64,000 nucleotides of DNA, from positions 248,001 to 312,000 of IMG/VR virus record IMGVR_UViG_3300029922_000001; one strand, written 5' to 3'. The position numbers were made by a program, and so were the translations under genes. This document shows positions 3,435 through 27,484 of the stretch, piece by piece. The notes under the pieces were generated by a model. It saw only the letters and a list, made by a program, of their open reading frames with translations. It made no database searches and was not told the DNA's origin. Position 1 is the first letter of the stretch. Every line of letters starts with the position of its first letter.

Positions 3435-3524
3435 AGGGGCATACTAGAATCAAACTAGTTCATAACGCATTTGCTAGATCATTAACCTAGCAGTGCGTCG
3501 CGATTCTCATTTCGCCAATGCCCC
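3435..3524 (-). tRNA. tRNA-Cys(GCA)-like gene with a 17-nt hairpin insertion in the anticodon loop
   Basis: GGGGCAT/ATGCCCC acceptor, U73, stem ACGCA/TGCGT around the 24-nt loop CTGCTAGGTTAATGATCTAGCAAA. Confidence 0.8.
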
Positions 3525-3534
3525 AAACTCTCGG

Positions 3535-3610
3535 AGCGCGGAGGGAGAATCGAACTCAACCGAATAATGGTTTTGCAGACCATTCCAATTAACCACTCTG
3601 GTACCCGCGC
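3535..3610 (-). tRNA. tRNA-Cys(GCA)
   Basis: GCGCGGG acceptor, ATGGT-CTGCAAA-ACCAT arm, TTCGATT loop; T-stem has mismatches. Confidence 0.85.
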
Positions 3611-3632
3611 ATATTTATCTCGCTGAGGTTCT

Positions 3633-4313
3633 TTATACCTCATATTGCTTCATTAATTCTGGATCACTTTGAGCCGCTATCCATTTATCATATTCTTCAA
3701 TTTGCTCTTTAATTTGTTCAGCACTATCTGCTGTTTTAGATTGGCAACTTTTAATGTCGTTTAATTTACTAAATAATGATTCCACAAGAGGATGTTTTGG
3801 TAAATAACATATTCCCTTAGAAGCATAATAATCAATTAATTCTTTTTGTTTAAGTTTTGATTCTAATTTATTTTCTTCTGAACATGAACACTTTGGATGA
3901 AATGCGTTATACATTCTCATATCTTCAATTCTATTTTCTTCAGTGTAAGCACTACAATTAAACAAAATTTCATCATCTTTATCATCCAACTCTAACAGAT
4001 TAATTAATTCTTTAATTTTATAAGTTGGTCGATTTTGCTTGTACCAATCCGATTTTTCGTTCTCTTGATTATTTATTAATAAATTCTGTTTTAATGATGG
4101 TATTAATTTTTCAAAAACCTCATGTAGTGTACTTCCTTTAATTTGCACTCTACCAGCAGGTTGAAAATTTAAATTAAATTTAATATTGCCTTTTTTGGAC
4201 ATTGTTAAAGTCATATGATTCGTTCCACCCATGTTACTTAATCCATCTGGACAATTTTGTAAAAACTCTTTTAATATTTTTAATGTTTTATCTATATTCA
4301 TTTCCTTTACCAA
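3633..4313 (-). CDS. hypothetical protein
   Basis: ORF track; lies between tRNA blocks. Confidence 0.75.
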   Translation of the reverse strand: MVKEMNIDKTLKILKEFLQNCPDGLSNMGGTNHMTLTMSKKGNIKFNLNFQPAGRVQIKGSTLHEVFEKLIPSLKQNLLINNQENEKSDWYKQNRPTYKIKELINLLELDDKDDEILFNCSAYTEENRIEDMRMYNAFHPKCSCSEENKLESKLKQKELIDYYASKGICYLPKHPLVESLFSKLNDIKSCQSKTADSAEQIKEQIEEYDKWIAAQSDPELMKQYEV

Positions 4314-4648
4314 GATATTGTTAACTGATAACTTTCATAACTTTCATATCCTTCGTATTCACGATCCTTTACAAGAACAACACCATATTCTTCGTCTTCA
4401 AAAAACTTTTTAACATTACAGGCAATTTGATAATTATATAATGTCTCCGTATGACATTCATACTCACCCCTTTTGGCATGTTTTTCAATTAATTTTTTAC
4501 ATTCATCAATGGTAGTTATTTCTAACTGTTGAAGTCGTAGTTTTTCAGATTGAGCGAATTGTCTTTCTTCTTCTTCAAGAGCAAGTCTTCTTGCTTCAAT
4601 TTGTTCTTTAGCTTCTTGAGTTAATCTTCTTGCTTCTTGGATGTTCAT
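4307..4648 (-). CDS. hypothetical coiled-coil protein
   Basis: ORF track; AGGTATAAT-7nt-ATG. Confidence 0.75.
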   Translation of the reverse strand: MNIQEARRLTQEAKEQIEARRLALEEEERQFAQSEKLRLQQLEITTIDECKKLIEKHAKRGEYECHTETLYNYQIACNVKKFFEDEEYGVVLVKDREYEGYESYESYQLTISW

Positions 4649-4656
4649 TGTAACTA

Positions 4657-4803
4657 TTATACCTTACGACGAATTCGTATGAGAGTATTATCTACTTCTT
4701 TTCTTGTGATACCTAAAAAAGCAGCAATTGCACGATAAGATTTATTTAAACCATAAGCAATATAAACCTTGGTTTCATTTTGAGTTAATTCTAAATTATT
4801 CAT
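4657..4803 (-). CDS. 48-aa stand-alone sigma-70 region 4-like HTH protein (not in ORF track)
   Basis: MNNLELTQNETKVYIAYGLNKSYRAIAAFLGITRKEVDNTLIRIRRKV; TGCTATAAT-7nt-ATG; resembles the SigH C-terminus. Confidence 0.7.
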   Translation of the reverse strand: MNNLELTQNETKVYIAYGLNKSYRAIAAFLGITRKEVDNTLIRIRRKV

Positions 4804-4828
4804 AAGTGTATTATAGCATATTTTCTCG

Positions 4829-4917
4829 CGGGAGCTTAGAGATTCGAACTCTAAAGGCGCTTTTTACACGCCTAGCTGTTTTCAAGACAGTTTACCGTCA
4901 CCAATGGCAGAACTCCC
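4829..4917 (-). tRNA. tRNA-Ser(TGA)
   Basis: Cloverleaf with CT-TGA-AA loop, long V-arm, G73. Confidence 0.9.
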
Positions 4918-4926
4918 GTATTATTT

Positions 4927-5013
4927 CGCGGTAAGTAAAATATTCGAATTCGATTCAAAGAATATGAAGACAAACTTTGTTTAATTATTGATTCTATTTT
5001 AGGTAGACTTAAC
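4927..5013 (-). pseudogene. possible decayed tRNA
   Basis: tRNA-sized spacer with GTTAAGT/ACTTACC ends, TTCGAAT and a G-CGAAA trailer; internal arms do not fold. Confidence 0.35.
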
Positions 5014-5025
5014 AATTAAACATCT

Positions 5026-5113
5026 CGAAGACACCAGAATCGAACTGGACTCGCTTTTTACACGAGCGAACAACTTTCCAGGTTGCCGTCATCACCATCA
5101 GACATTATCTTCC
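5026..5113 (-). tRNA. tRNA-Ser(GGA), 3' acceptor end imperfect
   Basis: GCAAC-CTGGAAA-GTTGT arm, long V-arm; the 3' end runs directly into CGAGA. Confidence 0.75.
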
Positions 5114-5125
5114 ATATTATCTCGG

Positions 5126-5198
5126 AGCGCCAAATTGGAATCGAACCAATTTCCTATTGCTTACCAAGCAATCGTTCACCCACATGAACTTTAAGCGC
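5126..5198 (-). tRNA. tRNA-Thr(GGT)
   Basis: ATTGC-TTGGTAA-GCAAT arm; complete cloverleaf. Confidence 0.9.
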
Positions 5199-5208
5199 AT
5201 ATATCTCG

Positions 5209-5282
5209 TGGAGGCTCAATAGAGAATCAAACTCTACTCTGCGGTTTACAAAACCGCTGCATCGTCACAATGCTTTAAAGCC
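5209..5282 (-). tRNA. tRNA-Thr(TGT), CCA encoded
   Basis: GCGGT-TTTGTAA-ACCGC arm; complete cloverleaf. Confidence 0.9.
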
Positions 5283-5295
5283 ATATTATCTCGTA

Positions 5296-5394
5296 AGCCT
5301 AGTATCTGATTCGAACAGATGATGTTTGTATTCTTACTTGTTCTATTTTTTAACACAACAAGGTAAGTGCAATCGACCGCTATGCAAACTAGGC
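5296..5394 (-). tRNA. tRNA-Thr(TGT)-like gene with an 18-nt insertion in the anticodon loop
   Basis: GCCTAGT/ACTAGGC acceptor, U73, CTTAC/GTAAG stem around the 25-nt loop CTTGT[TGTGTTAAAAAATAGAAC]AA. Confidence 0.7.
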
Positions 5395-5405
5395 ATTTTA
5401 TCTCG

Positions 5406-5494
5406 TGGAGGAAGGCAGCGGGATCGAACCGCAGACGTATTTCAGTCCGTATAGTTTAGCAAACTATCCTAATCGCCGTTTTAGATTACCTTCC
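5406..5494 (-). tRNA. tRNA-Ser(GCT), CCA encoded
   Basis: ATAGT-TTGCTAA-ACTAT arm, long V-arm. Confidence 0.9.
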
Positions 5495-5502
5495 ATTATC
5501 TC

Positions 5503-5586
5503 GGCTAACGGGGAGATTCAAACTCCCGAAGGTTTTCACCGATGCATTACGAGTGCATTCCAATTGATCAACTATGGGACGTTAGC
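5503..5586 (-). tRNA. tRNA-Thr(CGT) with an atypical long variable arm
   Basis: GCTAACG/CGTTAGC acceptor, ATGCA-CTCGTAA-TGCAT arm, V-arm GGT-GAAA-ACC. Confidence 0.8.
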
Positions 5587-5910
5587 ATTTAACATTTCTA
5601 CATATCTAACTAAAACCTGACCGTGACACCTTTCTTGTTCGCCCCAACCAGTTTTAGGTCTACAAAAGCATACCAATTTTTTATTATGTAAGGATTTTAC
5701 CTTATCTTTGAATATTAAATCAGTTTCTAATCTATTTTTTAGATATTTTTCATATTCTGGTAAAGTAGAACTAGGAACTTGACCTGGAGATAATACTATT
5801 GGATTGCCAAAATATCCACTCTGTCCTTTCCCTGCTCTACCTATGTAGACATATTCAGAATCTTGTTCCCAACCCTTGTTGAGATGATATAAATTTACTA
5901 CTTCAGTCAT
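5572..5910 (-). CDS. DUF4326-type protein
   Basis: VYIGR...FGNP...LHNKKLVCFCRP...CHGQVL. Confidence 0.8.
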   Translation of the reverse strand: MTEVVNLYHLNKGWEQDSEYVYIGRAGKGQSGYFGNPIVLSPGQVPSSTLPEYEKYLKNRLETDLIFKDKVKSLHNKKLVCFCRPKTGWGEQERCHGQVLVRYVEMLNANVP

Positions 5911-6463
5911 TGACTTCCTCTATATATGCTGGTGGCACATATTCTGTTAACCATACACCATTTTCAGAACGATAAAAAACAAATCTATTCAAATCCATTT
6001 GCTTTGAATCCACCTTCAATAGTGCATACTTTCCTCTTCTAGAACCAACATTAATTGCTGTTTCTATGTTTTCAGAAAGATGAACCGCATGACGATACAT
6101 CTTCTTAATTCCTTCCTCTAAAATCATTGGTACAGCATCATATGTTGTACCATGATAAAGAATGGCAGGAGGATTCAATGGAACTAACTGAAGATCAACT
6201 TCACAAGAATGACCTTGATTGGCTCTAATTCTTGCTCCTGATTCATCATAAGAATATCTTTGCTTATTATTTTCCGTCACTAACTGATCTAAATCAGCCT
6301 TTGTGATGTTAATATTAAACTTTTTCAAACCGTCTAATAGTTGTGTTACGAATACATAACCTCCAAGATCAAGCTTTTCAACTCCAATCTTTTGTGGCTC
6401 ATGTCGCAATATTAACGAAATAAACTTTCCTATTCTTTTAAATTCACGTTCATCCTTAATCAT
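5903..6463 (-). CDS. kptA: RNA 2'-phosphotransferase (Tpt1/KptA)
   Basis: ISLILRHEP, NNKQRY, RIRANQGHS, LYHGT, RHAVHLS, SENGVWLTEYVPP. Confidence 0.95.
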   Translation of the reverse strand: MIKDEREFKRIGKFISLILRHEPQKIGVEKLDLGGYVFVTQLLDGLKKFNINITKADLDQLVTENNKQRYSYDESGARIRANQGHSCEVDLQLVPLNPPAILYHGTTYDAVPMILEEGIKKMYRHAVHLSENIETAINVGSRRGKYALLKVDSKQMDLNRFVFYRSENGVWLTEYVPPAYIEEVND

Positions 6464-6485
6464 GTTCTTTTCCCTAACAATGCCC

Positions 6486-7016
6486 TTACTTTTTAGGTAA
6501 GAGCATTACTGTCATTTGTTTCCCTTGTAAGAGAATTTCCCTATCTACAGTTACAATATCATTTAGTTTTTCCAAACAATATTCCAACTTTTGCTTTCCA
6601 ATATGAGGGTGAGCGAGTTCTTTTGTTTTGAACTTGCAAACCAACTGCACTTTGTCATGCTTCCCAATAAATTCAACCGCTTTACGAATTGACGTATCCA
6701 AGTCATGTACAGCCGTATTAGGGCTAATACAAAGTGTTTTAAGTTCTTGAGGCTTTTTACGGTTGTCTTTTGCACGTTTTGCCTCTTCATACTTATATTT
6801 GCCATAGCTTACGATTTTGCAGATAGGTGGTTGTACCTTATCAGATACGCACAACAAATCTAAACCAGCATCATATGCTATTTGGATTGCATCCTTCGTG
6901 GGCATTACACCAATATTTTTGTTATTAGCGTCAATGACCGTTACTTCGGTAAATTGCTTAATGAGTCTTTCATTAAGGGGTGGGAATTCTCTGCGATTAC
7001 TTTTTTTCATCATCAT
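6486..7016 (-). CDS. infC: translation initiation factor IF-3
   Basis: LNERL...AGLDLLCVS...PPICKIVSYGKYKYEE...HDL...DKVQL...GKQMTVMLLP. Confidence 0.93.
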   Translation of the reverse strand: MMMKKSNRREFPPLNERLIKQFTEVTVIDANNKNIGVMPTKDAIQIAYDAGLDLLCVSDKVQPPICKIVSYGKYKYEEAKRAKDNRKKPQELKTLCISPNTAVHDLDTSIRKAVEFIGKHDKVQLVCKFKTKELAHPHIGKQKLEYCLEKLNDIVTVDREILLQGKQMTVMLLPKK

Positions 7017-7105
7017 AATAGATTGACCTATTATACCAGGGTATTCTTCTTCATTACAATCTTTCTCTATTCAATTTTCAATGTGCTTGAGTTTTAATTC
7101 TCGGT

Positions 7106-7150
7106 AAATAAAAAACAGGAAGTCCGACTTAGGTCTGTCGGACTTCCTGT
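7106..7150 (-). terminator. intrinsic terminator of the Thr/Ser/Cys leader (attenuator 3:4)
   Basis: 14-bp perfect stem ACAGGAAGTCCGAC/GTCGGACTTCCTGT followed by TTTTTATTT. Confidence 0.9.
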
Positions 7151-7173
7151 TGAATCTTTCTATTTGGTTTTCT

Positions 7174-7263
7174 TTATGCTTGCCCGACAACAGCATTTCT
7201 ACAGCTTCCACAACTTGTGGAACTGGTAGTACTTGATGTTGATGTTGACGTGACTAATTTCAT
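7174..7263 (-). CDS. 29-aa Thr/Ser/Cys-rich leader peptide (putative attenuator; not in ORF track)
   Basis: MKLVTSTSTSSTTSSTSCGSCRNAVVGQA*; GGTATAAT promoter upstream; terminator 23 nt after the stop. Confidence 0.85.
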   Translation of the reverse strand: MKLVTSTSTSSTTSSTSCGSCRNAVVGQA

Positions 7264-7303
7264 TTTAACCTGCTACGTTTATTATACCCAATGTTTTGAT
7301 TGT

Positions 7304-7837
7304 TTACCATGTTTTTTTGCTTTTACCATCAAAACCTGTTTCTTTTAAGATTCTATCCCAAATTTCTTCTTTTGGAGTGTTCCCTAAATATGGATCTTTT
7401 GCCCAATTCAAGTTGGTAATTTCTAGTATAACAGGAAATGGTGGAGTATAGGCTTCAGCTTCTTCTAAAGAAGAAAATTCCATTTCCATACTAAGCAAAT
7501 AATGTCTATGGATCATATATTCATTAATTTCTTCACCGCTAGATAAAAAAGTTCTTCGTTTTTCAACTCTTTTCATTTTTGGTATTAAATTGTAATTATA
7601 AAACCAATTAAAAAGAAAAATTGGGATTTTAATATTGTATTCTTTTCTGACCAAAGGATCTGAGGTTTTTAATTTAAAAGTTAATTCGCATTTATTTGAA
7701 ACTGAATATGTTTTACGAATGCGACAACTTTTAAAAAATGGAAAATATCCTTGTGAAATGTATACGTTGTGTGTTTGAGTATCCCAAGGAATATCATTTT
7801 GATTTACTATAAACTTGCGTTCAATTTCATTAGCCAT
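7304..7837 (-). CDS. CYTH / triphosphate tunnel metalloenzyme
   Basis: EIERKFIV, ISQGY, RIRK, ELTFK, RKEYNIKI, EMEF. Confidence 0.85.
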   Translation of the reverse strand: MANEIERKFIVNQNDIPWDTQTHNVYISQGYFPFFKSCRIRKTYSVSNKCELTFKLKTSDPLVRKEYNIKIPIFLFNWFYNYNLIPKMKRVEKRRTFLSSGEEINEYMIHRHYLLSMEMEFSSLEEAEAYTPPFPVILEITNLNWAKDPYLGNTPKEEIWDRILKETGFDGKSKKTW

Positions 7838-7850
7838 GCTTTAGTATACT

Positions 7851-8397
7851 TCATTTACCAGGACCCCACTCAAGACCAGGGAATTTATTTAAATTTTCCT
7901 CAATTTCTTTCCAGGGTGTGATTGATAGATATGGCTCTTTCGCCCAAGGCACATGTGTAATCTCTGTAACGTACTTGAAATCAGGAATATAAGCTTGTGC
8001 ATCTTCCAGAGAATCAAATTCCATTTCTACGATTACATAATACTGACCAGGATATTCATTAATTTGTTCTCCTGTTGGAATAATGTGTCGTGTTTTTTTA
8101 GTTTTAGTCATCCAAGGTGTAAGATACCAAAGCGGGAAAAAGACAAATTTAGGGATTTTAAAGTTATATTCCTTCCTGTCCTAAATTGGTCTGTTTATTC
8201 TTGTTTTTCTTGAATGTCAATTCGTATGTGCGGTCTTCATCTGAATATAATTCTTCATAGGTAATGATAGACTCACGAATTCTGAGATTTTTAATTAAAG
8301 GGAAATATCCTTGGGAAATGTCATGCCATTCTATAACATTTTCCCAAGGAATTTGGGTTGGTCGCACTATAAACTTGCGTTCAATTTCATTAGCCAT
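7851..8397 (-). pseudogene. second CYTH paralog, split by a +1 frameshift near 8180
   Basis: The N-half MANEIERKFIV (from 8397) and the C-half RKEYNFKIP...VEMEF are in different frames; 32 identical nt shared with the first copy's start. Confidence 0.75.
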
Positions 8398-8404
8398 ATG
8401 GCTA

Positions 8405-9592: not shown

Positions 9593-10891
9593 ATGAGTAG
9601 CATTCTCGCTAGTAAGAAATACATTTATACGGATATCCAGGCGAATAACAATAAGTTCTGGAATATTGACCGCTATGACGATCATACAGTAATTACACGT
9701 TGGGGACGTGTTGGCGACAAAGAACAAAGCAAATCTTTCCCACATGGATCTGAAACTTCCGCAATTGCTTTTTTTAATCAAAAGTGTAGTGAAAAATCCA
9801 AGAAGGGTTATACCGAACAACGAACCATTGAATCCAATACTACCGTAAAGCAAACAACCGTTGCTTCATCCAATCTTGAAAGTATTGCTAAAAGACAGAT
9901 TCAAACTAATTCACCTGAACTAGATGCTTTGATTTCAAGGCTTACCAAAGCTAACATTCATAGCATTGTCGCAAACAGTAATATTAGCTATAACGATACA
10001 ACTGGTTTGTTTTCAACGCCATTAGGAATTATTGATGAAGATGCGATTTTGGAAGCTAGAGAACTTCTAGTGTCCATTAATTCTATTGTTCTCAATAGAG
10101 ACTTTGGAAATAAGGATTTTGCTGGAATCACCAATAAGTATTTTAGAATCGTTCCTACAGTTATCGGTAGATATCGTCAAGAACCTCAAGACCTATTCCC
10201 TAATAAGGAAACCGTTGTAAAGCAAAATGATCTTTTGGACTCACTTGAAGTCAGCTTGCAAACTGCTAAGGCAACCCCTGTAACTGCTACAACATCTGTT
10301 GAACCTGAAAAGAACATCTTTAATGTTAAGCTTCATGTGGTTGATGATCTTCCTGTTATTCAACGAATTACAGCCAAATATCAATCAACAATGAATCGTG
10401 GTCATCAGTGTTCCCATCTTGGTGTTAAGCGTGTTTATGAATTAGAAATTGGTGCTATGAAGACTGCTTTCGAAAATAAGGGTAAGCAAATTGGTGGTAT
10501 TCAAGAGTTGTGGCACGGTTCAAGAGTTGCCAATATTCTTTCTATTCTCTATAAGGGAATGATTATCCCACCTTCTAATTCTAGTTTTGTGGCTGGTCGT
10601 TTGTTTGGAGACGGTTTGTATTTTGCCAACCAAAGCACAAAGTCTCTTAATTATTCTTATGGATATTGGGATGCTAAAGGCAAGGACGAAAATTGCTTTA
10701 TGTTCCTTTGTGATGTAGCTATGGGCAAGCACTATACTCCTAAGTATTTACAATCCAATATTCCTGCTGGATATGATAGTTTCTGGGCTAAGGCTGGTAT
10801 TTCTGGCGTACAGAATGATGAAATCATCGTTCCACGTCTTTATCAAGCCAATCCTAGATATTTGATCGAATTCTCACCAGGTGGTAGATAA
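9593..10891 (+). CDS. WGR-domain PARP-like ADP-ribosyltransferase
   Basis: NNNKFW...RWGRVG (WGR); STPLG...TNKYFRIVP (regulatory domain); LWHGS, GDGLYFA and NDEIIV (H-Y-E triad); TTGACA-17-TATTAT promoter sets the start at 9593. Confidence 0.93.
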   Translation: MSSILASKKYIYTDIQANNNKFWNIDRYDDHTVITRWGRVGDKEQSKSFPHGSETSAIAFFNQKCSEKSKKGYTEQRTIESNTTVKQTTVASSNLESIAKRQIQTNSPELDALISRLTKANIHSIVANSNISYNDTTGLFSTPLGIIDEDAILEARELLVSINSIVLNRDFGNKDFAGITNKYFRIVPTVIGRYRQEPQDLFPNKETVVKQNDLLDSLEVSLQTAKATPVTATTSVEPEKNIFNVKLHVVDDLPVIQRITAKYQSTMNRGHQCSHLGVKRVYELEIGAMKTAFENKGKQIGGIQELWHGSRVANILSILYKGMIIPPSNSSFVAGRLFGDGLYFANQSTKSLNYSYGYWDAKGKDENCFMFLCDVAMGKHYTPKYLQSNIPAGYDSFWAKAGISGVQNDEIIVPRLYQANPRYLIEFSPGGR

Positions 10892-10925
10892 GATCAAGCC
10901 TGTTCTTGAGGTATAATAAATCATT

Positions 10926-11354: not shown

Positions 11355-11362
11355 AATAAAGT

Positions 11363-11836: not shown

Positions 11837-11843
11837 AACAAAA

Positions 11844-12065: not shown

Positions 12066-12072
12066 TCAAGAT

Positions 12073-20797: not shown

Positions 20798-21694
20798 TTA
20801 TAAGAGAACTACTCTGTCCTCAATAATACTCTTTACAAAACCACCAACGTATGTGGTGAACTCTGGATTCCAATGCTTAGGCATAAATTGAGGATTCATA
20901 CACTCCACAAAGTGATTTCGCCAAAGCTTAATCATTCCTTCTGGTGTGTATTTAGCTACAATTAAGTTCCAAGTATTCTGTTCCTTATATCGCTTCTTTA
21001 ATACATACTTGCTTAGGTTTTGGTTCTTCTTTTTAATGCTTTCTTTTAGTTCTGGAGACATGCTCTTTCGAATTTCTTCTCTAGCATCATATTCTTCCTT
21101 AGCATATTTGTAAACCAAATCAAGATCCAATGGCGCACCAATCTGCTTTTCAAGCTTATTCCATAGTGCTACCCATTCATAGCTATTCATTGAAGTTTCT
21201 GAATAAACTAAATGGAAACACTGTTTCTTAAATGTGCCTCTCATAACCAAACTAGTATGTTCAACTTCACTCTTTAGCTTTGCCTTCAAAGGATTAGCAA
21301 ACTTTTGTTCATATAGTTCATGACATTCACGACAAGTTAACACTAAATCGTGTGCTTCAGCAAACTTCTTATACTTTACAGGAAAGAAATTACGTACACA
21401 TTTAGGAATAACGTGATGCCTGTCTAAATTATCTGGTCTACCGCAAACAACACACATAGTTTGTCTAGGTGTTTTGTAGATTGGGTGAGTCAAATTTAAA
21501 ATTTCGTCACTTGGTTTCTTATTGAGTTGTAATACGCAAGGTTGCTGCGATACGATTTGTCCTTTTTCGTATCTCAATAAGAGATTAGCAATACTTCTAC
21601 CTGTGTAAAAGACTACTTCATTATTTGGGTCAACGACCTTCACATTTTGATAAAATGGATTTTCGTCTGACCACCGATTTCCTTTTGAAGCCAT
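20798..21694 (-). CDS. HNH-type protein resembling the C-terminal domain of EXD2
   Basis: YQNVKVVDPNNEVVFYT; CVVCG...RHHVIPKCVRNFFP...HDLVLTCRECH. Confidence 0.7.
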   Translation of the reverse strand: MASKGNRWSDENPFYQNVKVVDPNNEVVFYTGRSIANLLLRYEKGQIVSQQPCVLQLNKKPSDEILNLTHPIYKTPRQTMCVVCGRPDNLDRHHVIPKCVRNFFPVKYKKFAEAHDLVLTCRECHELYEQKFANPLKAKLKSEVEHTSLVMRGTFKKQCFHLVYSETSMNSYEWVALWNKLEKQIGAPLDLDLVYKYAKEEYDAREEIRKSMSPELKESIKKKNQNLSKYVLKKRYKEQNTWNLIVAKYTPEGMIKLWRNHFVECMNPQFMPKHWNPEFTTYVGGFVKSIIEDRVVLL

Positions 21695-21715
21695 ATAAGC
21701 TATTGTAGCATATTT

Positions 21716-22162
21716 CTATGGTGATTTCGCCCAATAGTTTTTATAATGTTTAACTTCAGCATCTAAATCAAAAGGTAATCCTTTAACATGGTTGAAGTAA
21801 GCTTTAGATATAATGCCAGTCATATCATCCGCATGAAGTACTCCTAAATTTTTAAACCACTTAGCTAATACGGAGTCATGCCACAATCCCCAGGTATTGC
21901 GCATATAAGTACCATAGCCATGATGTGGCATCATTTCATAAGTGGATTTAGCATCATTTTTGATGAAATCTATATATTCAGGAGTTGCCACTGAATCAAA
22001 ATAAGCGATAACTTCATCTAGATTATTTGGGATATTGGTTGCACTAATAGCGGGTAAGATTTTTACAACCTTAACTAGCCTATTAAAATATTCATTATTA
22101 TCGAAAGCGTCTTGAATTGATTTGTCTGTGACTTTTTCCATGCGTACTTCATCATTGTTCAT
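21716..22162 (-). CDS. DUF6794-like protein
   Basis: HHGYGTYMRNTWGLW...GVLHADDMTGII. Confidence 0.6.
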   Translation of the reverse strand: MNNDEVRMEKVTDKSIQDAFDNNEYFNRLVKVVKILPAISATNIPNNLDEVIAYFDSVATPEYIDFIKNDAKSTYEMMPHHGYGTYMRNTWGLWHDSVLAKWFKNLGVLHADDMTGIISKAYFNHVKGLPFDLDAEVKHYKNYWAKSP

Positions 22163-22680
22163 AGTTTATTATACTTAATCAGATTCTCTTCTTGTGTGAT
22201 TTTATCCCAAGGTGCTTTAGATTGAAGAACTTTTTCAACAGTTGGATCATAATCCCAACGTTTAATCATATTTTGAATACTTTTAAGAGGTACACTATGT
22301 TGATTTCTTTTAGCTAATTCTTGTGCATCGAATTTCCAAGGTGTTTCAGGTTCATGAAAACTAACTTTATAATCATATTTTTGAGCAAGTTTTACGTACT
22401 CTCGAAATTCATAAAAAGAACAATTTGTATTGTCACAAATAATAGGAGTAATACCTTGTTGCATTGCCACTTCAGTTCTTCTTTCATTTTCTTTATGATT
22501 TTCAGTTAGTTTATTAACATCAAATTTATATTCACCATTAACCATAAATAGATCATCAGTAGAATGAATAACTCCACCTTTTCCTAATTGCTTAGAAAGA
22601 AAACTTTTGCCAGAACCGGGAAGTCCGCGAATTATTCTTAACTCTTTTTCTTGTTGTGCTTTTCTATACCAAGTAGACAT
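22159..22680 (-). CDS. AAA_33 / N4BP2-like polynucleotide kinase
   Basis: RGLPGSGKS, STDD, ICDNTN, LAKRNQHSVP. Confidence 0.88.
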   Translation of the reverse strand: MSTWYRKAQQEKELRIIRGLPGSGKSFLSKQLGKGGVIHSTDDLFMVNGEYKFDVNKLTENHKENERRTEVAMQQGITPIICDNTNCSFYEFREYVKLAQKYDYKVSFHEPETPWKFDAQELAKRNQHSVPLKSIQNMIKRWDYDPTVEKVLQSKAPWDKITQEENLIKYNKL

Positions 22681-22687
22681 AATTCGA

Positions 22688-23395
22688 TTATACCATTTTT
22701 CTATCAATAATTTCTCTAGTAATATATCCAGTAAACTTCTGCCAAGATTTCCGCGTCATTTGTTTTCTTACTCTTTTATATAAAGAATGTTTCTTAATTG
22801 CTTTAGTTATTGCTTTACCATTGAGCTTAATAGAGTCAACATCAATGCACGACATAAAGCTTTTTGCTAAAGCTTGAACTTCTAGGGGATTGTTAAAATA
22901 CGCATACTCTCCCATGTCATAGATGTTGATATATGTTTTGTCTTTACGTTTTTCTGTATACTCATTTTGAAAATTAGTAATATACAAATCATAATCAGCA
23001 TGAAAATCTGGCACACATCCTGCTTGTAAACAGTGAACCAACTCATGTCCCAATCTATCAACATAATCTGCGAGACAATGACATTCACATATATCAAGAT
23101 ATATGTAATAGTACATATATCTTTCACCAAAACCGCTGGAATCATCATCTAAAAGAAATATTCTAATAGGATATTTAAACATTTTTAGTGAGTTTAACCA
23201 ATTTTCTATTTCTAATAGTTTTCTTCTAAATTTATTACCATTAATGGAACTTTCTAATATACCAATACTTTCCTCAATACAAGGATGACGTTGTTTAACT
23301 GTTTTTGTTTTTATTTCACTTAATTTCCAATTAACTTCAATTAATCGTTTAGCTAATTCAACTTCAATTCCATGTGTATCGGGGATTTTAGGCAT
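22688..23395 (-). CDS. HExxH metallopeptidase-like protein
   Basis: GHELVHCLQ...YFNNPLEVQA; paralogous to 60393-61091. Confidence 0.6.
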   Translation of the reverse strand: MPKIPDTHGIEVELAKRLIEVNWKLSEIKTKTVKQRHPCIEESIGILESSINGNKFRRKLLEIENWLNSLKMFKYPIRIFLLDDDSSGFGERYMYYYIYLDICECHCLADYVDRLGHELVHCLQAGCVPDFHADYDLYITNFQNEYTEKRKDKTYINIYDMGEYAYFNNPLEVQALAKSFMSCIDVDSIKLNGKAITKAIKKHSLYKRVRKQMTRKSWQKFTGYITREIIDRKMV

Positions 23396-23445
23396 AAACT
23401 CTTAAACTCTCTAACTCGTAAGCACCTTGTGGTGCTTTATTATAC

Positions 23446-23730
23446 TTATCGGTAAATATGAATGTGAGCAAAGGTTGGTTTATTGGTTAATGCTACTTCG
23501 TATTTCAAAACACAAGAATCTTCACCATCTTTCATGTGTTTGGCAGATATAATTTCTTTATCAATACCATCTTTTCCAGCAAGACGAATACCTGTTTGTT
23601 TAAGAGCGGCAGATTTGATAGCGTGTTGGAAAAATATATCAGCGTGTTGTGAATATCCTTCACGATCTAATCTAGCACTCATTTCTAAAATTAAATCTTG
23701 ATTCATATAACCAATATACGCAATCCACAA
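23446..23730 (-). CDS. hypothetical protein
   Basis: ORF track. Confidence 0.6.
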   Translation of the reverse strand: MWIAYIGYMNQDLILEMSARLDREGYSQHADIFFQHAIKSAALKQTGIRLAGKDGIDKEIISAKHMKDGEDSCVLKYEVALTNKPTFAHIHIYR

Positions 23731-23918
23731 TTAAAAACCTTTACAATAAAATATGGTTTCTAAGCGTAAAATACTCAAAGTAATAAATAGAGAAATTAGA
23801 ATAGTCAACTCTAATATACAAAGATGTAGTTCAAAAAGTAGCTATTTGAGACTTATGACACGTAAAATTCTCTTAATTAATTATCAACACAAATTACAAT
23901 AATTCTTATAATACAATT

Positions 23919-24311
23919 ATGGAAAATACAAATAAAATCCCTAAAGAAATTAAGATCGTAAAAGTTGGTAGTGACGATTATCCTGCATCTGAAGCAGATT
24001 TAGAAGCAGTTCAAGAAGAATTAGCCGCATTAGCTAACGATCCCACATTGCCTAAAACTAATAAATATAAAACTCAAACCATTAAACCTTCCGGTAAAGG
24101 TGAAAAACAAATTTTATTTGTTAAACTTGGTAATAGACATCGTTATGCCAGTGAGTCAGACCTGGATTCAGTAAGGGAAGAAATACTTAAATCATTAAAA
24201 GATTTAAAAAATGATAATCTACTCACCTGGGTCGTACCTCATGATTTTAACATCAAAATTCTCAATGTTGATTCACAAGATGATATTGAAGTAAAAGTTG
24301 AACGCGGATAA
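23919..24311 (+). CDS. protein made of two copies of a portal-clip-like motif
   Basis: IVKVGSDDYPASEADLEAVQEE and FVKLGNRHRYASESDLDSVREE internal repeat. Confidence 0.65.
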   Translation: MENTNKIPKEIKIVKVGSDDYPASEADLEAVQEELAALANDPTLPKTNKYKTQTIKPSGKGEKQILFVKLGNRHRYASESDLDSVREEILKSLKDLKNDNLLTWVVPHDFNIKILNVDSQDDIEVKVERG

Positions 24312-24662
24312 TTACCAAATAAGAGTTGCATAAGTTATGTCATCTTCAGTCCAATAATGGACTTCGTAGCCCATAATAGCCATTTCTGCGGCAAATAAAC
24401 TACCATCATCATGAGTTGCGTAAGTTGGTTGACTGATTGTTATTTTCCGTTTACCAGCTTGTGCTGCTCCACTAATTCGCTTAAAAACCGATGCAAAACG
24501 TTGTTCGATTTGTTCCTGACGTTGTTTCTTTTCTATTACAGGAATTGCTGTCACTTTTGGCATTAATCCTCTAGCTTCTTTGGCTTTCATATCATTATTG
24601 TACTTATAATAGAGATATGAAGCCATTATGGACAGATAGAGATCGTAGCCCAAGTGAACCAA
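24312..24662 (-). CDS. hypothetical protein
   Basis: ORF track. Confidence 0.6.
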   Translation of the reverse strand: MVHLGYDLYLSIMASYLYYKYNNDMKAKEARGLMPKVTAIPVIEKKQRQEQIEQRFASVFKRISGAAQAGKRKITISQPTYATHDDGSLFAAEMAIMGYEVHYWTEDDITYATLIW

Positions 24663-24967
24663 ATTTCACAGATTATACCTATGTGTATTTTCAAGGTCAT
24701 AAAATTGGAGAAATTAAAGATTGCATAAGTTATTCTTTAACTCCATATTTAAATGAAGCTGAAATTGATGACATTGATCATATTTGCACTTTTACTATTA
24801 TAAATCAATATAAAGAATATGATCAAAAGTGTATAGAAATTGTAGATGAATGCGGAAGATATTACAACATGCATAATGAAATAATACAACTTGGATTAAA
24901 GGCTAAAATTCAACAGTTAGGTGAATTGTATGCAAATGAAACTAAAAAGATGGCTACTGTTGTATAA
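24617..24967 (+). CDS. hypothetical protein
   Basis: ORF track. Confidence 0.6.
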   Translation: MKPLWTDRDRSPSEPNFTDYTYVYFQGHKIGEIKDCISYSLTPYLNEAEIDDIDHICTFTIINQYKEYDQKCIEIVDECGRYYNMHNEIIQLGLKAKIQQLGELYANETKKMATVV

Positions 24968-24975
24968 ACAGTAGC

Positions 24976-25149
24976 ATGGATATTTTAGATAGATACAGTA
25001 AAGATACTATAGATTATGTGCTATTAACTGACGTATGCAAATCCGCAATACTCGACACCATTTTTCAGATGGTAGATAGAGGGGCACCAGATGAAGAGAT
25101 TCTTGATGATATCAGGCAATTAAGAGAAAGATATCTAAGTATTCGTTAA
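24976..25149 (+). CDS. 57-aa hypothetical protein (not in ORF track)
   Basis: Manual translation MDILDRYSKDTIDYVLL...RYLSIR*. Confidence 0.5.
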   Translation: MDILDRYSKDTIDYVLLTDVCKSAILDTIFQMVDRGAPDEEILDDIRQLRERYLSIR

Positions 25150-25275
25150 ATTATGTAACAAATTAGGATTGCGGAATCCTAGTTAATATGGAACAAAATC
25201 TATTAACCATTCATATCAATCGTCTTCAAAAACTTATTCAAATGAACGCACCTGATTTTATCATAGAACAAGAGG

Positions 25276-25950
25276 TTAAATTATTACTCTCACTTTGGGT
25301 TTAACCCAAAGTGACTCAATAGTAAAATAAACAACAATACCTAAAGCTGGATTAATTTCATATTCATGCTCTCCATCTTCATTTATAACAGGTTGATCAT
25401 TATCATCATATAAATAAATATGCCCACGAACATCATCGGCAGGTAAACATTTAATTTTACTAACTTGTAAATCACCATAAACTTGTATATTTTTACATAC
25501 GGCTTCACGGTGAGCATCCTCAAACATGTTTAAGCCATCATCAAATAGTAATTCTTGGCGATTGTAACCAGCCTGATTAAGTGTTTGATAAATATAAACA
25601 TCTAATTGTCTAGATAAGCTTCTAATGGCTTTATTTGCACTAGACTCACTAAATAAAGCACCCATTCTTTCATCCCAAGGCAAATCACACTTTGGATCAC
25701 GCATTCTTACTGCTAATGAACATGCTATTTCAATAGGTTTAATACTGTCTAAGTCTATTGTTTTAATTTGTTGTGGTATATGAAAGCGACTATTAGATAA
25801 TGCCACAACGTCCATATTAATATATGAAGAATCTATGACTGTTAAAATACTTTTCCAAGTGTTGGTAATACCATCAAATTTTTCTTGAATAACTAATTCC
25901 TGTTGTTTAGTTGCTTCAATCCTATCATTTACATTTTTAAAGTAATTCAT
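25276..25950 (-). CDS. truncated, divergent capsid-protein-like paralog
   Basis: SLSRQLDVYIYQTLNQA aligns with RQIDT...INAA of the 41080 and 42459 proteins; LPADD...LGIVVY. Confidence 0.5.
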   Translation of the reverse strand: MNYFKNVNDRIEATKQQELVIQEKFDGITNTWKSILTVIDSSYINMDVVALSNSRFHIPQQIKTIDLDSIKPIEIACSLAVRMRDPKCDLPWDERMGALFSESSANKAIRSLSRQLDVYIYQTLNQAGYNRQELLFDDGLNMFEDAHREAVCKNIQVYGDLQVSKIKCLPADDVRGHIYLYDDNDQPVINEDGEHEYEINPALGIVVYFTIESLWVKPKVRVII

Positions 25951-26813
25951 ATATTATTATAAGTCATTTTATAATCATAATCATAAGCCTTAAACCACTT
26001 CCTGATAGCATTATCACTAACTCCATATTTCTTACCAATCTTAACCATTGATAAAGTTTTGTAATCTTCAATTAATTGTTCTAATGATGGTCTTTCTGCT
26101 TTTCGTGTATTTAATGCACGATCTTGTGAGTTTGGTAATACAATATTAAAGTATTTACATATTCTTATAATTTTACTTTCAGAACATTTAAATTGTTTGC
26201 CAATTAATTTTAATCCATTTTTATTAATCAATTGTTGGAGTTCTTCTTTGGTTAAATTATTATCATCTACCCAAATTTTATAATCTTTTTTTTGTCTTTC
26301 TTTAACCTCTTTTATTGATAAATGTTTTGCCCATAATTTGTTTTTAGATCCAAAATTATCAGTTTGACTATGACAGTTAGGACATAAAAATCTTAAATTA
26401 TCTTGTGTATTATGAGTGTAGTTTCCATCAACATGATCAACGTGTAATGTTATTTTCTTTCCTAACCAATCTTTATTGACAAAACATTCACTACCTTCAC
26501 ACTCATAAGGTCTTCCAGTTTCAATAAGAGCCCTAGTTAATAATTTAGATGATACTCTGTTATTTCCAAATTTTATATTTACTAAAATATCTTCGGCAGT
26601 TTTACGATTTACACTTTTCTTGCCTCTCATCCAGTTTTCACTATTGAAATGGTCTGTATTAATATTAAAATAATTAACTCTACGTTTAATGTGTGTTTGG
26701 CTACCACCAGCTTGTACAATATTTAGATTTCTTAAAACCCCTGCATAGGAAAAACTTTTATTTACCGCTTCTTCTAATATGTCTTTTGTGTATTTTTCTT
26801 TATATTTTCTCAT
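25947..26813 (-). CDS. HNH homing endonuclease with HTH tail
   Basis: LHVDHVDGNYTHN...LRFLCPNCHSQT; IGKKYGVSDNAIRKW. Confidence 0.92.
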   Translation of the reverse strand: MRKYKEKYTKDILEEAVNKSFSYAGVLRNLNIVQAGGSQTHIKRRVNYFNINTDHFNSENWMRGKKSVNRKTAEDILVNIKFGNNRVSSKLLTRALIETGRPYECEGSECFVNKDWLGKKITLHVDHVDGNYTHNTQDNLRFLCPNCHSQTDNFGSKNKLWAKHLSIKEVKERQKKDYKIWVDDNNLTKEELQQLINKNGLKLIGKQFKCSESKIIRICKYFNIVLPNSQDRALNTRKAERPSLEQLIEDYKTLSMVKIGKKYGVSDNAIRKWFKAYDYDYKMTYNNI

Positions 26814-26892
26814 ACTATTAATATACTGGAAGATACACTAAATTACCTTTAATTAAAGGTATAGGTTCAAATTTATAATAAAATTTATCTCG

Positions 26893-26973
26893 TACTAGGA
26901 AAGGGACTCGAACCCTCAAGGATCATTCGTTCTTAACGAAGTGGGTCTGCCATTTCCCATTATCCACCCTAGC
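26893..26973 (-). tRNA. tRNA-Leu(AAG)-like gene with a non-canonical core
   Basis: Extra GGATAA between acceptor and D-arm, complementary to ATCC in the short variable region; loop TT-AAG-AA; A73. Confidence 0.7.
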
Positions 26974-26986
26974 ATATTAATCTCGG

Positions 26987-27068
26987 TACTAGAGAAGGGA
27001 TTCGAACCCTCAAGGATTTTTGTTTCTAAAACAAAACGGTCTACCGATTCCACGTTATCCACCCTAGC
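26987..27068 (-). tRNA. tRNA-Leu(TAG)-like gene with the same non-canonical core
   Basis: GCTAGGGTGGATAA...ATCCTTGAGGGTTCGA shared with its neighbour; loop TT-TAG-AA; A73. Confidence 0.7.
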
Positions 27069-27078
27069 ATTTATCTCG

Positions 27079-27162
27079 TCCCGGCGAGTGGACTCGAACC
27101 ACCACGCCCTTTCAGGCAACAGATTTTGAGTCTGCCGCATCTACCAATTACACCACACCGGG
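27079..27162 (-). tRNA. tRNA-Leu(CAA)
   Basis: Canonical type II cloverleaf, CT-CAA-AA. Confidence 0.92.
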
Positions 27163-27181
27163 ATATTTCTCGTATAAGAAA

Positions 27182-27361
27182 TTAATTCTTATTTTGTGAA
27201 TCAAGTTGTCTTACTCTACTAAATAAAGCATCTCTCATTTCTTTGTTTTCACTTACTTCTTTAGCGTATGCACCCATCATATTTCTAAACATTTTTTGAC
27301 CTTCTTCAGTATTCATTGCTGATTCAATTATTTTCATTTTTTCAGGACTTGTTATAATCAT
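27182..27361 (-). CDS. 59-aa hypothetical protein inside the Leu array (not in ORF track)
   Basis: GGAG SD; MIITSPEKMKIIESAMNTEEGQKMFRN...DSQNKN*. Confidence 0.7.
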   Translation of the reverse strand: MIITSPEKMKIIESAMNTEEGQKMFRNMMGAYAKEVSENKEMRDALFSRVRQLDSQNKN

Positions 27362-27382
27362 ATTAATTCTCCAATATCTCGG

Positions 27383-27484
27383 TGAGCAAACAGGGACTTG
27401 AACCCTGATGACATTTTACTGTCGATGGGTTAGCAAAATTCTGATCTTGCTAAGCCCATTGCGTCTACATTTCGCCATTCGCCC
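27383..27484 (-). tRNA. tRNA-Leu(TAG)-like gene with an 18-nt hairpin insertion in the anticodon loop
   Basis: ATGGG/CCCAT stem around CTTAG[CAAGATCAGAATTTTGCT]AA; long V-arm; A73. Confidence 0.8.

What the first reader, a model, noticed from the sequence alone, without database searches (positions are those of the whole stretch)
3435..27484. Three tRNA genes carry 17-18 nt hairpin insertions that sequester the anticodon
Cys-like (3435-3524), Thr-like (5296-5394) and Leu-like (27383-27484) genes have intact bodies but 24-25 nt anticodon loops. In each, the insert pairs back onto the anticodon (GCTAG/CTAGC, TTGTT/AACAA, TTAGCAAGAT/ATTTTGCTAA). Removing 17-18 nt restores CTGCAAA, CTTGTAA and CTTAGAA. 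The inserts are far too short for group I introns, and I see no clear bulge-helix-bulge. Each has an insert-free gene with the same anticodon nearby. Inference: they are enzyme-spliced mini-introns, latent cleavage-activated tRNAs, or decoys for anticodon nucleases. The Cys junction is ambiguous, since an alternative cut gives GCT.
Basis: partly seen in the sequence, partly recalled or inferred. Interest (0 to 1): 0.75.

Follow-up and report, generated by a model that had tools for sequence, protein, structure and literature searches.

The report
Hairpin mini-inserts in phage tRNA genes
A 441-kb peat phage has seven otherwise intact tRNA genes (three in this window) interrupted at the anticodon by short hairpins that hide it; a close relative lacks three of them precisely, so they behave like tiny introns that no known bacterial or phage machinery removes.

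Summary
The three genes are minus-strand tRNA genes with 17-18-nt inserts that pair with their own anticodon. Four more lie elsewhere in the same genome: Lys UUU, Gly GCC, Gly UCC and Tyr GUA. Deleting each insert in silico gives a gene that ARAGORN calls as a normal tRNA, and the anticodon then fits the acceptor identity elements.

The helices are far more stable than with shuffled inserts (p 0.0007-0.004 each) and are stronger on the tRNA strand. A close relative (ENA contig L217) has insert-free orthologues of the Thr and Cys genes and an insert-free Gly GCC gene at the syntenic site. It also has its own insert-bearing Gly UCC. More distant relatives have none among 82 tRNAs.

Stems stay paired through compensatory changes. 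All seven genes carry the CGAG[A/T] 3' motif found after every tRNA in this genome.

The inserts are not group I introns and have no bulge-helix-bulge. Five of seven lie at 36/37, not 37/38. I found no endonuclease gene and no transcript data.

Best reading (0.45): RNA-level mini-introns. The cut geometry fits RNase III, and the ends would suit the phage's Rnl1/Rnl2-type ligases. Rivals: unspliced masked tRNA mimics, or insertional inactivation. The Tpt1 link is weak.

The parts
3435..3524 (-). CysI: tRNA-Cys(GCA)-type gene (U73) with a 17-nt insert at 3473-3489. The anticodon arm 3465-3498 forms a 14-bp hairpin.
   Evidence: insert-free orthologue L217:3297-3372
5296..5394 (-). ThrI: tRNA-Thr(UGU)-type gene with an 18-nt insert at 5340-5357, between nt 36 and 37. 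It has a long (9-nt) variable loop.
   Evidence: insert-free orthologue L217:1261-1342, where the alignment gap equals the insert; five compensated stem pairs
27383..27484 (-). LeuI: class II tRNA-Leu(UAG)-type gene (A73) with an 18-nt insert at 27432-27449, between nt 36 and 37. A 10-bp extension helix with a CAGA loop stacks on the anticodon stem.
3533..3610 (-). Insert-free tRNA-Cys(GCA), 8 nt upstream of CysI. It is not a recent duplicate of CysI.
4828..5586 (-). Array of seven tRNA genes: Thr CGU, Ser GCU, ThrI, Thr UGU, Thr GGU, Ser GGA, Ser UGA. Each is followed by the CGAG[A/T] trailer motif.
26894..27670 (-). Leu array: Leu UAA, Leu AAG, LeuI, Leu CAA, plus two sub-threshold tRNA-like genes (26988-27068 with loop UUUAGAA; 26894-26973 with an AAG loop).
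5903..6463 (-). Tpt1/KptA RNA 2'-phosphotransferase, in the same predicted transcription unit as the tRNA array.
   Evidence: PF01885, 1.6e-44
5572..5910 (-). DUF4326 protein between Tpt1 and the first tRNA.
   Evidence: context in PMC7824862
6486..7059 (-). Phage IF3 gene (6486-7016), preceded by a promoter-like site at 7059-7030. This is the start of the predicted IF3 / Tpt1 / DUF4326 / tRNA operon. A terminator lies at 7151-7114.
4307..4648 (-). 113-aa ORF inside the tRNA operon, 92% conserved in relative R. It has a weak fold likeness to R3H/Jag/HP0268 nucleic-acid-binding domains. This is a lead only.
   Evidence: the AF2 single-sequence model was poor
39883..40761 (+). T4-type polynucleotide kinase-phosphatase (Pnkp).
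58286..59314 (+). HNH endonuclease fused to an Rnl2-family RNA ligase. It is a candidate cut-and-seal enzyme; this is inference only.
   Evidence: fusion class noted in PMC7824862
53952..54524 (+). Macro domain protein, part of the ADP-ribose toolkit with Tpt1, NADAR (941-1453) and the PARP-like gene (9593-10891).

Best explanation
The inserts are short structured intervening sequences (mini-introns) in otherwise functional phage tRNA genes.

In the precursor, the insert folds back so that the anticodon arm becomes one 13-20-bp helix with the anticodon paired. Such an RNA cannot decode, and it offers no single-stranded anticodon loop to nucleases. To work as a tRNA, the insert must be cut out and the loop resealed.

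In six of eight cases (this genome plus relative R), the two cuts needed for a canonical 7-nt loop lie on opposite strands of the helix, staggered to leave a 2-nt 3' overhang. That is the geometry of RNase III-type enzymes, which leave 5'-phosphate and 3'-OH ends. Those ends are exactly what the phage's T4 Rnl1-like and Rnl2/Rnl5-like ligases join.

Shown: the structures, their significance, the restoration of canonical tRNAs, the presence/absence polymorphism, and the repair-enzyme genes.

Inferred: that excision happens at all, which nuclease does it (host RNase III or the phage HNH-ligase fusion), and the benefit (a masked, nuclease-proof or phage-dependent tRNA reserve).
For: (1) There are seven such genes in one genome, and their inserts are unrelated in sequence and length (14-31 nt). 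Each nevertheless extends the anticodon stem: insert-shuffle p is 0.0007-0.004 each.

(2) In five of six inserts at 36/37, the last two insert nucleotides pair with anticodon positions 35 and 36 and covary with the anticodon (GC/UA, AU/GC, UA/UA, CG/CG, CG/CG). Joint chance is about 2e-5.

(3) The helices are stronger on the tRNA strand: summed energy -122 versus -86 kcal/mol, and 14 versus 4 G-U pairs.

(4) Deleting the inserts gives seven genes that ARAGORN calls as normal tRNAs. Loops are C/U-U-NNN-A-A/G in six of seven (the Tyr gene gives UUGUAGU), and anticodons match the discriminator and acceptor identity elements.

(5) Close relative R (L217, syntenic, 75-100% nt identity) has insert-free orthologues of ThrI and CysI. 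The Thr alignment gap equals the 18-nt insert exactly. R also has its own insert-bearing Gly UCC with the same geometry and a shared insert core, TGGGAT..TACCTA.

(6) ThrI differs from its insert-free orthologue by five fully compensated stem pairs and no broken pair. The outgroup G004 supports the R-like state at acceptor pair 5 and anticodon-stem pair 28-42.

(7) All seven genes carry the same CGAG[A/T] 3' trailer as the other 23 tRNA genes: 30 of 30, against 0.12 expected. They also sit inside tRNA arrays behind a promoter-like site.

(8) Both Gly tRNA genes of this phage carry inserts, so the phage has a Gly tRNA only if the inserts are removed.

(9) The phage encodes Pnkp, an Rnl1-like ligase, Rnl2-like and Rnl5-like ligases and an HNH-Rnl2 fusion.
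Against: There is no transcript evidence. The only RNA run covers 5558-5862 and none of the insert-bearing genes, and shows no joints.

The phage has no recognisable endonuclease for the job: no EndA, RNase III, RtcB or 2H phosphoesterase.

The insert site is not uniform. It is 36/37 in five genes, inside the anticodon in Cys, and 31/32 or 32/33 in Tyr. Tyr cannot give a 7-nt loop with the RNase III stagger.

The 2-nt stagger follows arithmetically from full pairing plus one bulged base, so it is not independent evidence.

The helices (13-20 bp) are short for a typical bacterial RNase III substrate.

Intact isoacceptor genes sit beside the Cys, Thr and Lys genes, and intact Tyr genes lie elsewhere in the genome, so dead copies would be tolerated.

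Insert-bearing genes are on the more diverged side compared with R (71-81%, against 64-100% for intact pairs).

The genome also holds degenerate tRNA-like genes and a truncated tRNA remnant, so tRNA gene decay does occur here.
Confidence: 0.45

Rival explanations
1. Insertional inactivation. The hairpins are selfish or mutational insertions that kill the tRNA. They are tolerated because the phage (and its host) have other genes for the same codons. The genes are young pseudogenes whose bodies have not yet decayed.
For: There is presence/absence between close relatives, and family-level relatives have no inserts (0 of 47 and 0 of 35 tRNAs). Intact same-anticodon genes lie nearby for Cys, Thr and Lys, and elsewhere in the genome for Tyr. 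The genome holds sub-threshold tRNA-like genes and a truncated Gly tRNA remnant. Insert-bearing genes are somewhat more diverged from R than most intact ones. No splicing enzyme was identified.
Against: Eight independent inserts of unrelated sequence all form anticodon-pairing helices with G-U pairs valid only on the RNA sense strand. No simple mutational process makes that. All stems are intact, and five compensated pair changes occurred in ThrI. The Gly UCC insert core is conserved between two phages although the tRNA bodies differ by 40%. All carry the tRNA 3' trailer motif. Both Gly genes of the phage would be dead.
Confidence: 0.3
2. The RNAs are made and kept unspliced: tRNA-shaped RNAs with a masked anticodon that act outside decoding. 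They might be sponges or regulators for synthetases, CCA-adding or modification enzymes or tRNA-targeting toxins, or aminoacyl carriers for anticodon-blind synthetases such as LeuRS.
For: The helices are selected and strand-specific. Acceptor, D and T arms and the discriminators are preserved. The Gly UCC insert core is more conserved than the tRNA body. A G-G mismatch recurs at the sixth pair of the extension in three inserts, which could be a recognition feature. The Tyr gene cannot yield a canonical loop by the common geometry.
Against: Six of seven genes keep U33 with a C or U at 32, an anticodon that fits the body, and A37 with A or G at 38 on either side of the insert; the Tyr gene keeps U33 and a fitting anticodon but has G37 and U38. 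This is unnecessary if the loop is never restored. Close relatives manage with insert-free orthologues. A paired anticodon is a poor decoy for loop-specific anticodon nucleases. CysRS and ThrR S-type synthetases read the anticodon, so CysI and ThrI would probably not be charged unspliced (established knowledge of E. coli identity rules; not tested here).
Confidence: 0.2
3. Assembly or sequencing artefact, or chance hits of an intron-permissive tRNA finder.
For: ARAGORN -i does give occasional doubtful calls elsewhere: 2 in 680 kb of unrelated loci.
Against: Identical sequence occurs in independent assemblies and runs. There were no hairpin-type calls among 82 tRNAs of related phages. The shuffle tests argue against chance, as do the orthologues in relative R.
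Confidence: 0.01

Closest known systems
'Enigmatic' tRNA introns of Lak megaphages (Devoto et al. 2019, PMC6784885). tRNA introns are also reported in alternatively coded jumbo phages (PMC13037316).
   Same: Both are intervening sequences in the anticodon loop of huge-phage tRNA genes. Both are present or absent among close relatives. Neither is classifiable as group I, and the mechanism is unknown for both. By my reading of their Table S6, and given the authors' remark of a one-nucleotide offset, the Lak introns also fit position 36/37 rather than 37/38. This reading is inference.
   Different: Lak introns are 79-114 nt, share terminal motifs and contain a tRNA-like element. Here the inserts are 14-31 nt, unrelated to each other, and are little more than a hairpin that pairs with the anticodon. 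This genome shows no sign of TAG recoding.
Archaeal and eukaryal protein-spliced tRNA introns (EndA/Sen endonuclease, bulge-helix-bulge motif, RtcB or Trl1 + Tpt1 ligation)
   Same: The size range is the same (11-60 nt in eukaryotes). The intron pairs with the anticodon. Cutting and ligation would have to be done by proteins. Tpt1, Pnkp and RNA ligases are encoded.
   Different: There is no bulge-helix-bulge: the helix is continuous with at most one bulged base. The site is 36/37, not 37/38. The phage has no EndA homologue. tmRNA and IF3 genes point to a bacterial host. The ligases are T4 Rnl1/Rnl2/Rnl5 types, not Trl1 or RtcB.
Intervening sequences (IVS) of bacterial 23S rRNA, excised by RNase III (review PMC8708148)
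   Same: Both are extra stem-loops grafted onto a loop of a stable RNA. Both are sporadic among close relatives. IVS are removed by a double-strand-specific cut, and the cut geometry needed here is of the RNase III type.
   Different: IVS are 100-200 nt, occur in rRNA, and the fragments are not religated. A tRNA cut in its anticodon loop would need ligation to decode. RNase III action here is untested.
Group I self-splicing introns in bacterial and phage tRNA anticodon loops
   Same: The location is in the anticodon loop, in some cases directly 3' of the anticodon (from my own knowledge of the Azoarcus tRNA-Ile and similar introns; not tested here).
   Different: The inserts are ten times too short to hold a ribozyme core. 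There is no Rfam intron match in the window.
T4-type tRNA anticodon-loop repair (PrrC nuclease versus Pnkp + Rnl1)
   Same: The same enzyme set is encoded (Pnkp, Rnl1-like). The reaction proposed for the last step is the sealing of a broken anticodon loop.
   Different: In T4 the break is damage inflicted by a host nuclease on a normal tRNA. Here a programmed insert would have to be removed first.

Membership tests
Archaeal/eukaryal protein-spliced tRNA introns | Bulge-helix-bulge (two 3-nt bulges separated by 4 bp) or the canonical 37/38 position | tested here: not met
   Folds show a continuous helix with at most one bulged base. Alignments with insert-free genes put the insert at 36/37. Placing it at 37/38 would give a pyrimidine at 37.
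Archaeal/eukaryal protein-spliced tRNA introns | EndA/Sen-type splicing endonuclease available | tested here: not met
   PF01974 has no match in the 441-kb genome at E<=1. The host genome is unknown.
Archaeal/eukaryal protein-spliced tRNA introns | Ligation by RtcB, or by a Trl1-type ligase followed by Tpt1 | tested here: inconclusive
   Tpt1 is present. There is no RtcB. The ligases best match T4 Rnl1, T4 Rnl2 and NgrRnl, not Trl1.
Archaeal/eukaryal protein-spliced tRNA introns | Intron pairs with the anticodon in the precursor | tested here: met
Group I introns in tRNA genes | Ribozyme core (P3-P9; at least about 200 nt) | tested here: not met
   The inserts are 14-31 nt. There is no Rfam intron family match in the window.
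Lak-type huge-phage tRNA introns | Insert in the anticodon loop of a huge-phage tRNA gene, present or absent among close relatives | tested here: met
   The genome is 441 kb. Relative R lacks the Thr, Cys and Gly GCC inserts.
Lak-type huge-phage tRNA introns | 79-114 nt with an internal tRNA-like element and shared termini | tested here: not met
   The inserts are 14-31 nt, with no shared termini and no T-arm-like element (compared with Table S6).
RNase III-excised intervening sequences | Extra stem-loop on a stable RNA, sporadic among relatives | tested here: met
RNase III-excised intervening sequences | Cleavage by RNase III, leaving a 2-nt 3' overhang | not testable with these tools
   The cuts required for a canonical loop have that stagger in six of eight genes (my reading). 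The phage has no RNase III gene. Host enzyme action is untested.
tRNA pseudogenes | Broken stems or loss of the tRNA fold | tested here: not met
   All stems are paired. Normal ARAGORN calls follow insert removal. ThrI shows five compensated changes and no broken pair.
Bona fide expressed tRNA | Transcript detected, processed and aminoacylated | not testable with these tools
   The only RNA run found has no coverage of the tRNA genes.

The most novel reading that the evidence does not exclude
A protein-dependent tRNA splicing pathway exists in a bacterial virus. Hairpin mini-introns at position 36/37 would be excised by a double-strand-specific nuclease (host RNase III or the phage HNH-ligase fusion). 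The anticodon loop would then be resealed by phage Rnl1/Rnl2-type ligases. This would give 'RNA repair' enzymes of huge phages a housekeeping substrate, and would give the phage tRNAs that stay masked from anticodon nucleases until the phage matures them.
Probability: 0.3. Interest if true: 0.9.

Novelty: new variant of a known kind. Interest (0 to 1): 0.78.

Why it matters
Bacteria and their viruses are thought to have only self-splicing (group I) tRNA introns. Protein-catalysed tRNA splicing is regarded as an archaeal and eukaryal trait. The 'enigmatic' tRNA introns of huge phages have had no mechanistic lead since 2019.

These minimal inserts reduce the problem to a 14-31-nt hairpin. The cut sites are defined by comparison with insert-free orthologues, and candidate ligases are encoded in the same genome. 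That makes the question directly testable in vitro.

If the inserts are spliced, phage Pnkp and RNA ligase sets would have a programmed substrate, not only damage repair. Masked anticodons would also be a new way to shield tRNAs from host anticodon nucleases.

If the inserts are not spliced, the result is still of interest. It would show a recurrent, structure-selected way of silencing or re-purposing tRNA genes.

Tried and rejected
Relatives. Searches with Tpt1, the 226-aa ORF and the DUF4419 ORF in IMG/VR found nothing. IF3 in IMG/VR and in JGI metagenomes gave only 34-43% relatives or identical copies. The D-arm DNA pattern scan gave mostly unrelated hits. The ORF beside the Leu array has no homologue other than itself, so the Leu gene has no comparative data.

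Transcripts. Only one RNA run holds any of this stretch, and it covers 5558-5862 only.

Endonuclease. There is no EndA, RNase III, RtcB or 2H in the phage. ORFs inside the tRNA operon have no Pfam or PHROG hits. The atlas match of the 226-aa ORF to RNase III is at chance level (TM about 0.3), and I see no RNase III signature in the sequence. AF2 of the 113-aa ORF was too poor to search with (pLDDT 56). Complex prediction of the HNH-ligase with the Leu precursor was not folded by the tool, so it is no evidence either way.

Ideas rejected:
- A bulge-helix-bulge in an alternative fold: there is none.
- The apical loops as alternative anticodons: they are only 3-5 nt.
- A single mobile element: the inserts share no sequence.
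- Palindromic footprints of transposon excision, or template switching: the palindrome centre lies inside the insert and half of it is new sequence.
- TAG recoding as context: reading TAG as sense gives no gain in long ORFs.

The Tpt1 link was weakened by contig L010, where Tpt1 lies near a NADAR gene with no tRNA genes nearby.

Full report
**What the window is.** It is bases 248001-312000 of a 441,498-bp IMG/VR virus record (CheckV 100%, about 33% G+C) from peat metagenomes. It encodes bacterial-type translation parts: IF3, a class II aminoacyl-tRNA synthetase and a tmRNA. The host is therefore a bacterium. The same sequence was assembled independently in two JGI samples, in a 521-kb ENA contig and in Logan contigs of several runs, with no differences across 20 kb.

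**Check of the observation.**
- The three genes are on the minus strand. ARAGORN with introns allowed finds each as a complete tRNA body with a 17-18-nt insert in the anticodon loop. Default mode misses them.
- RNAfold gives cloverleaves whose anticodon arm is a single 14-15-bp hairpin with the anticodon paired. The quoted pairings are correct.
- Shuffling only the insert gives p<=0.001-0.003 for each arm.
- Deleting nt 3473-3489, 5340-5357 and 27432-27449 gives genes that ARAGORN default calls Cys GCA, Thr UGU and Leu UAG.
- These anticodons fit the identity elements I read in the sequences: U73 for Cys; G1-C72 and C2-G71 for Thr; A73 and a long variable arm for Leu.
- The statement that each has an insert-free twin nearby holds for Cys and Thr. 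For Leu, only a sub-threshold tRNA-like gene (26988-27068, 20.5 bits) has a UAG loop.

**It is a system, not three accidents.** Four more genes of the same kind lie elsewhere in the genome:

| Gene | Genome position | Insert |
|---|---|---|
| Lys UUU (ARAGORN misreads it as Gln) | 172713-172810 | 24 nt |
| Gly GCC | 245888-245993 | 31 nt |
| Gly UCC | 247521-247620 | 22 nt |
| Tyr GUA | 389592-389681 | 14 nt |

- The seven inserts share no sequence, yet each extends the anticodon stem.
- In five of six inserts at 36/37 (counting the one in relative R), the last two insert bases pair with anticodon positions 35 and 36 and change with the anticodon. Joint chance is about 2e-5.
- The arms are more stable on the tRNA strand than on the complement in seven of eight cases: summed energy -122 versus -86 kcal/mol, and 14 versus 4 G-U pairs. 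This points to selection on the RNA.
- All 30 tRNA or tRNA-like genes of the genome, the seven included, are followed within a few bases by CGAG[A/T]. The chance expectation is 0.12.
- The Thr array lies behind a promoter-like site in a unit IF3 / Tpt1 / DUF4326 / tRNAs.

**Relatives.**
- Family-level relatives have 82 tRNA genes in the regions examined and no hairpin insert. These are G001 and G003 (IF3 36-40% identical) and G004 (378 kb, 131 shared ORFs at about 38% identity).
- G004 has an intact Thr UGU with the same D-arm and the same unusual long variable loop as ThrI.
- A close relative, R, was found through the 113-aa ORF inside the tRNA operon. It is contig L217 (ENA, 41.8 kb), syntenic and 75-100% identical in DNA.
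- In R, the orthologue of ThrI lacks exactly the 18 nt between CUUGU and AA. The orthologue of CysI has the loop CUGCAAA. An insert-free Gly GCC sits at the place of the insert-bearing one.
- R also has its own insert-bearing Gly UCC (loop CUUCC, then 18 nt, then AA) with the same geometry. Its insert shares the core TGGGAT..TACCTA with the Gly UCC insert of this genome, although the two tRNA bodies are only 60% identical.
- ThrI differs from its insert-free orthologue by five stem pairs changed on both sides and none broken. G004 supports the R-like state at two of these pairs (acceptor pair 5 and anticodon-stem pair 28-42), so those changes happened on the ThrI lineage while pairing was kept.

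**What it is not.**
- Not a group I intron: the inserts are far too short and there is no Rfam match.
- Not a bulge-helix-bulge intron: the helix is continuous with at most one bulged base. The site is 36/37 in five genes, inside the anticodon in Cys, and 31/32 or 32/33 in Tyr.
- The phage has no EndA, RNase III, RtcB or 2H enzyme.
- Not the Lak type of phage tRNA intron. Those are 79-114 nt and contain a tRNA-like element. They are the closest reported thing, and by my reading they lie at the same site.

**Mechanism proposed.**
- In Leu, Thr, Lys and R's Gly UCC, the helix begins U33-A38, U34-A37 with C32 bulged. In Gly GCC it begins U32-A38, U33-A37 with G34 bulged. In Cys it begins U33-A36.
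- The cuts that restore a 7-nt loop then lie two pairs apart on opposite strands and leave a 2-nt 3' overhang. In Cys, the shifted insertion site preserves this geometry.
- This is RNase III-type geometry. Such enzymes leave 5'-phosphate and 3'-OH ends, which ATP-dependent RNA ligases join directly.
- The phage encodes a T4 Rnl1-like ligase (the T4 enzyme seals broken anticodon loops), Rnl2-like and Rnl5-like nick-sealing ligases, an HNH-Rnl2 fusion and Pnkp.
- Bacterial 23S rRNA intervening sequences are a precedent for RNase III excision of grafted hairpins that are sporadic among relatives.
- This step is inference. The stagger follows from full pairing plus one bulge. Tyr does not fit, the own Gly UCC gene is ambiguous because of a TTCC repeat, and nothing was tested biochemically.

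**Tpt1.** Its position at the head of the tRNA operon is suggestive, but three things weaken the link.
- The ligases present do not create 2'-phosphate junctions.
- An unrelated phage contig (L010) has Tpt1 in a PTH2 / Tpt1 / 115-aa ORF / 243-aa ORF / NADAR block, with no tRNA genes within 10 kb.
- This phage also has Macro, NADAR and PARP-like genes, which is an NAD/ADP-ribose toolkit of the kind described for jumbo phages.

**Weighing the explanations.** That the hairpins are real, RNA-level, selected structures in tRNA genes is well supported (about 0.8).

| Explanation | Weight |
|---|---|
| Inserts are removed to give working tRNAs | 0.45 |
| Insertional inactivation tolerated by redundancy | 0.30 |
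| Unspliced masked tRNA mimics | 0.20 |

The evidence is indirect for all three. It includes canonical loops restored in six of seven genes (the Tyr gene gives UUGUAGU, with G37 and U38), compensated stems, one conserved insert, both Gly genes interrupted, and the shared processing motif. There is no transcript evidence either way.

Noticed in passing
window 3425-5600 and 26880-27680; whole genome: Every tRNA or tRNA-like gene of this genome (30 of 30; 0.12 expected by chance) is followed within a few bases of the acceptor end by CGAG[A/T] and an A/T-rich spacer of about 8 nt. Only 353 such motifs exist on both strands of the genome. Relative R has the motif; G004 does not. It is probably a 3'-processing signal.
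   Followed up: partly
window 26894-26973 and 26988-27068 (minus strand): Two tRNA-like genes that ARAGORN does not call and Rfam scores below threshold (19-20 bits). They have acceptor and T arms, the CGAG motif and Leu-type anticodon loops (AAG, UAG). They may be decaying or unorthodox tRNAs.
   Followed up: partly
window 45574-45927 (+): A phage-encoded tmRNA with tag peptide GKSYAYVG.
   Followed up: no
genome 172128-172200 and 353602-353673 (outside the window): There are two tRNA genes with anticodon CUA (amber suppressors). The genome shows no sign of TAG recoding: reading TAG as sense gives no more long ORFs, and TAG ends 7% of long ORFs.
   Followed up: partly
window 941-1453, 5572-6463, 9593-10891, 53952-54524: A dense NAD/ADP-ribose toolkit: NADAR, DUF4326, Tpt1, a WGR-PARP-like protein and a Macro domain protein. 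Tpt1 and NADAR also occur in one gene block (with two uncharacterised ORFs between them) in an unrelated phage contig (L010).
   Followed up: partly
window 27929-29275 (+) and 35196-36305 (-): Two TnpB/Cas12f-like (OrfB_IS605) genes. One lies directly beside the Leu tRNA array. HNH endonuclease genes lie at 25947-26813 and 20798-21694.
   Followed up: no
window 5340-5357; genome 172713-172810 and 245888-245993: In the Thr, Lys and Gly GCC inserts, the sixth pair of the extension helix (second insert base against the fourth from the end) is a G-G mismatch. This is a possible recognition feature.
   Followed up: no
genome about 247265-247292 (about 700 nt before the window); L217:6764-6838: Where relative R has an intact Gly UCC gene, this genome keeps only its 3' third. 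It is a truncated tRNA remnant.
   Followed up: partly
L005 (ENA contig, 521,591 bp): The same phage is assembled as a 521.6-kb contig in ENA, against 441.5 kb in IMG/VR. The record may be incomplete, or the longer contig may carry a repeat of the ends.
   Followed up: no
L111:3937-4052, L114:733-848, L177:5450-5588: Other IMG/VR contigs hold 116-139-nt tRNA-like genes with the same D-arm (GGCGAAATGTAGACGC) as LeuI and CysI and a long unexplained central segment.
   Followed up: no
L217:5870-5975: Relative R has a further odd tRNA-like gene (ARAGORN calls it 'Phe aaa' with a 24-nt intron). It lacks the CGAG motif and is unclear.
   Followed up: no
window 4307-4648 (-): A 113-aa ORF in the middle of the tRNA operon, 92% conserved in R. 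In the ESM Atlas it has a confident model with weak likeness to R3H/Jag/HP0268 nucleic-acid-binding folds (TM 0.46-0.58). AF2 without an alignment could not reproduce it.
   Followed up: partly
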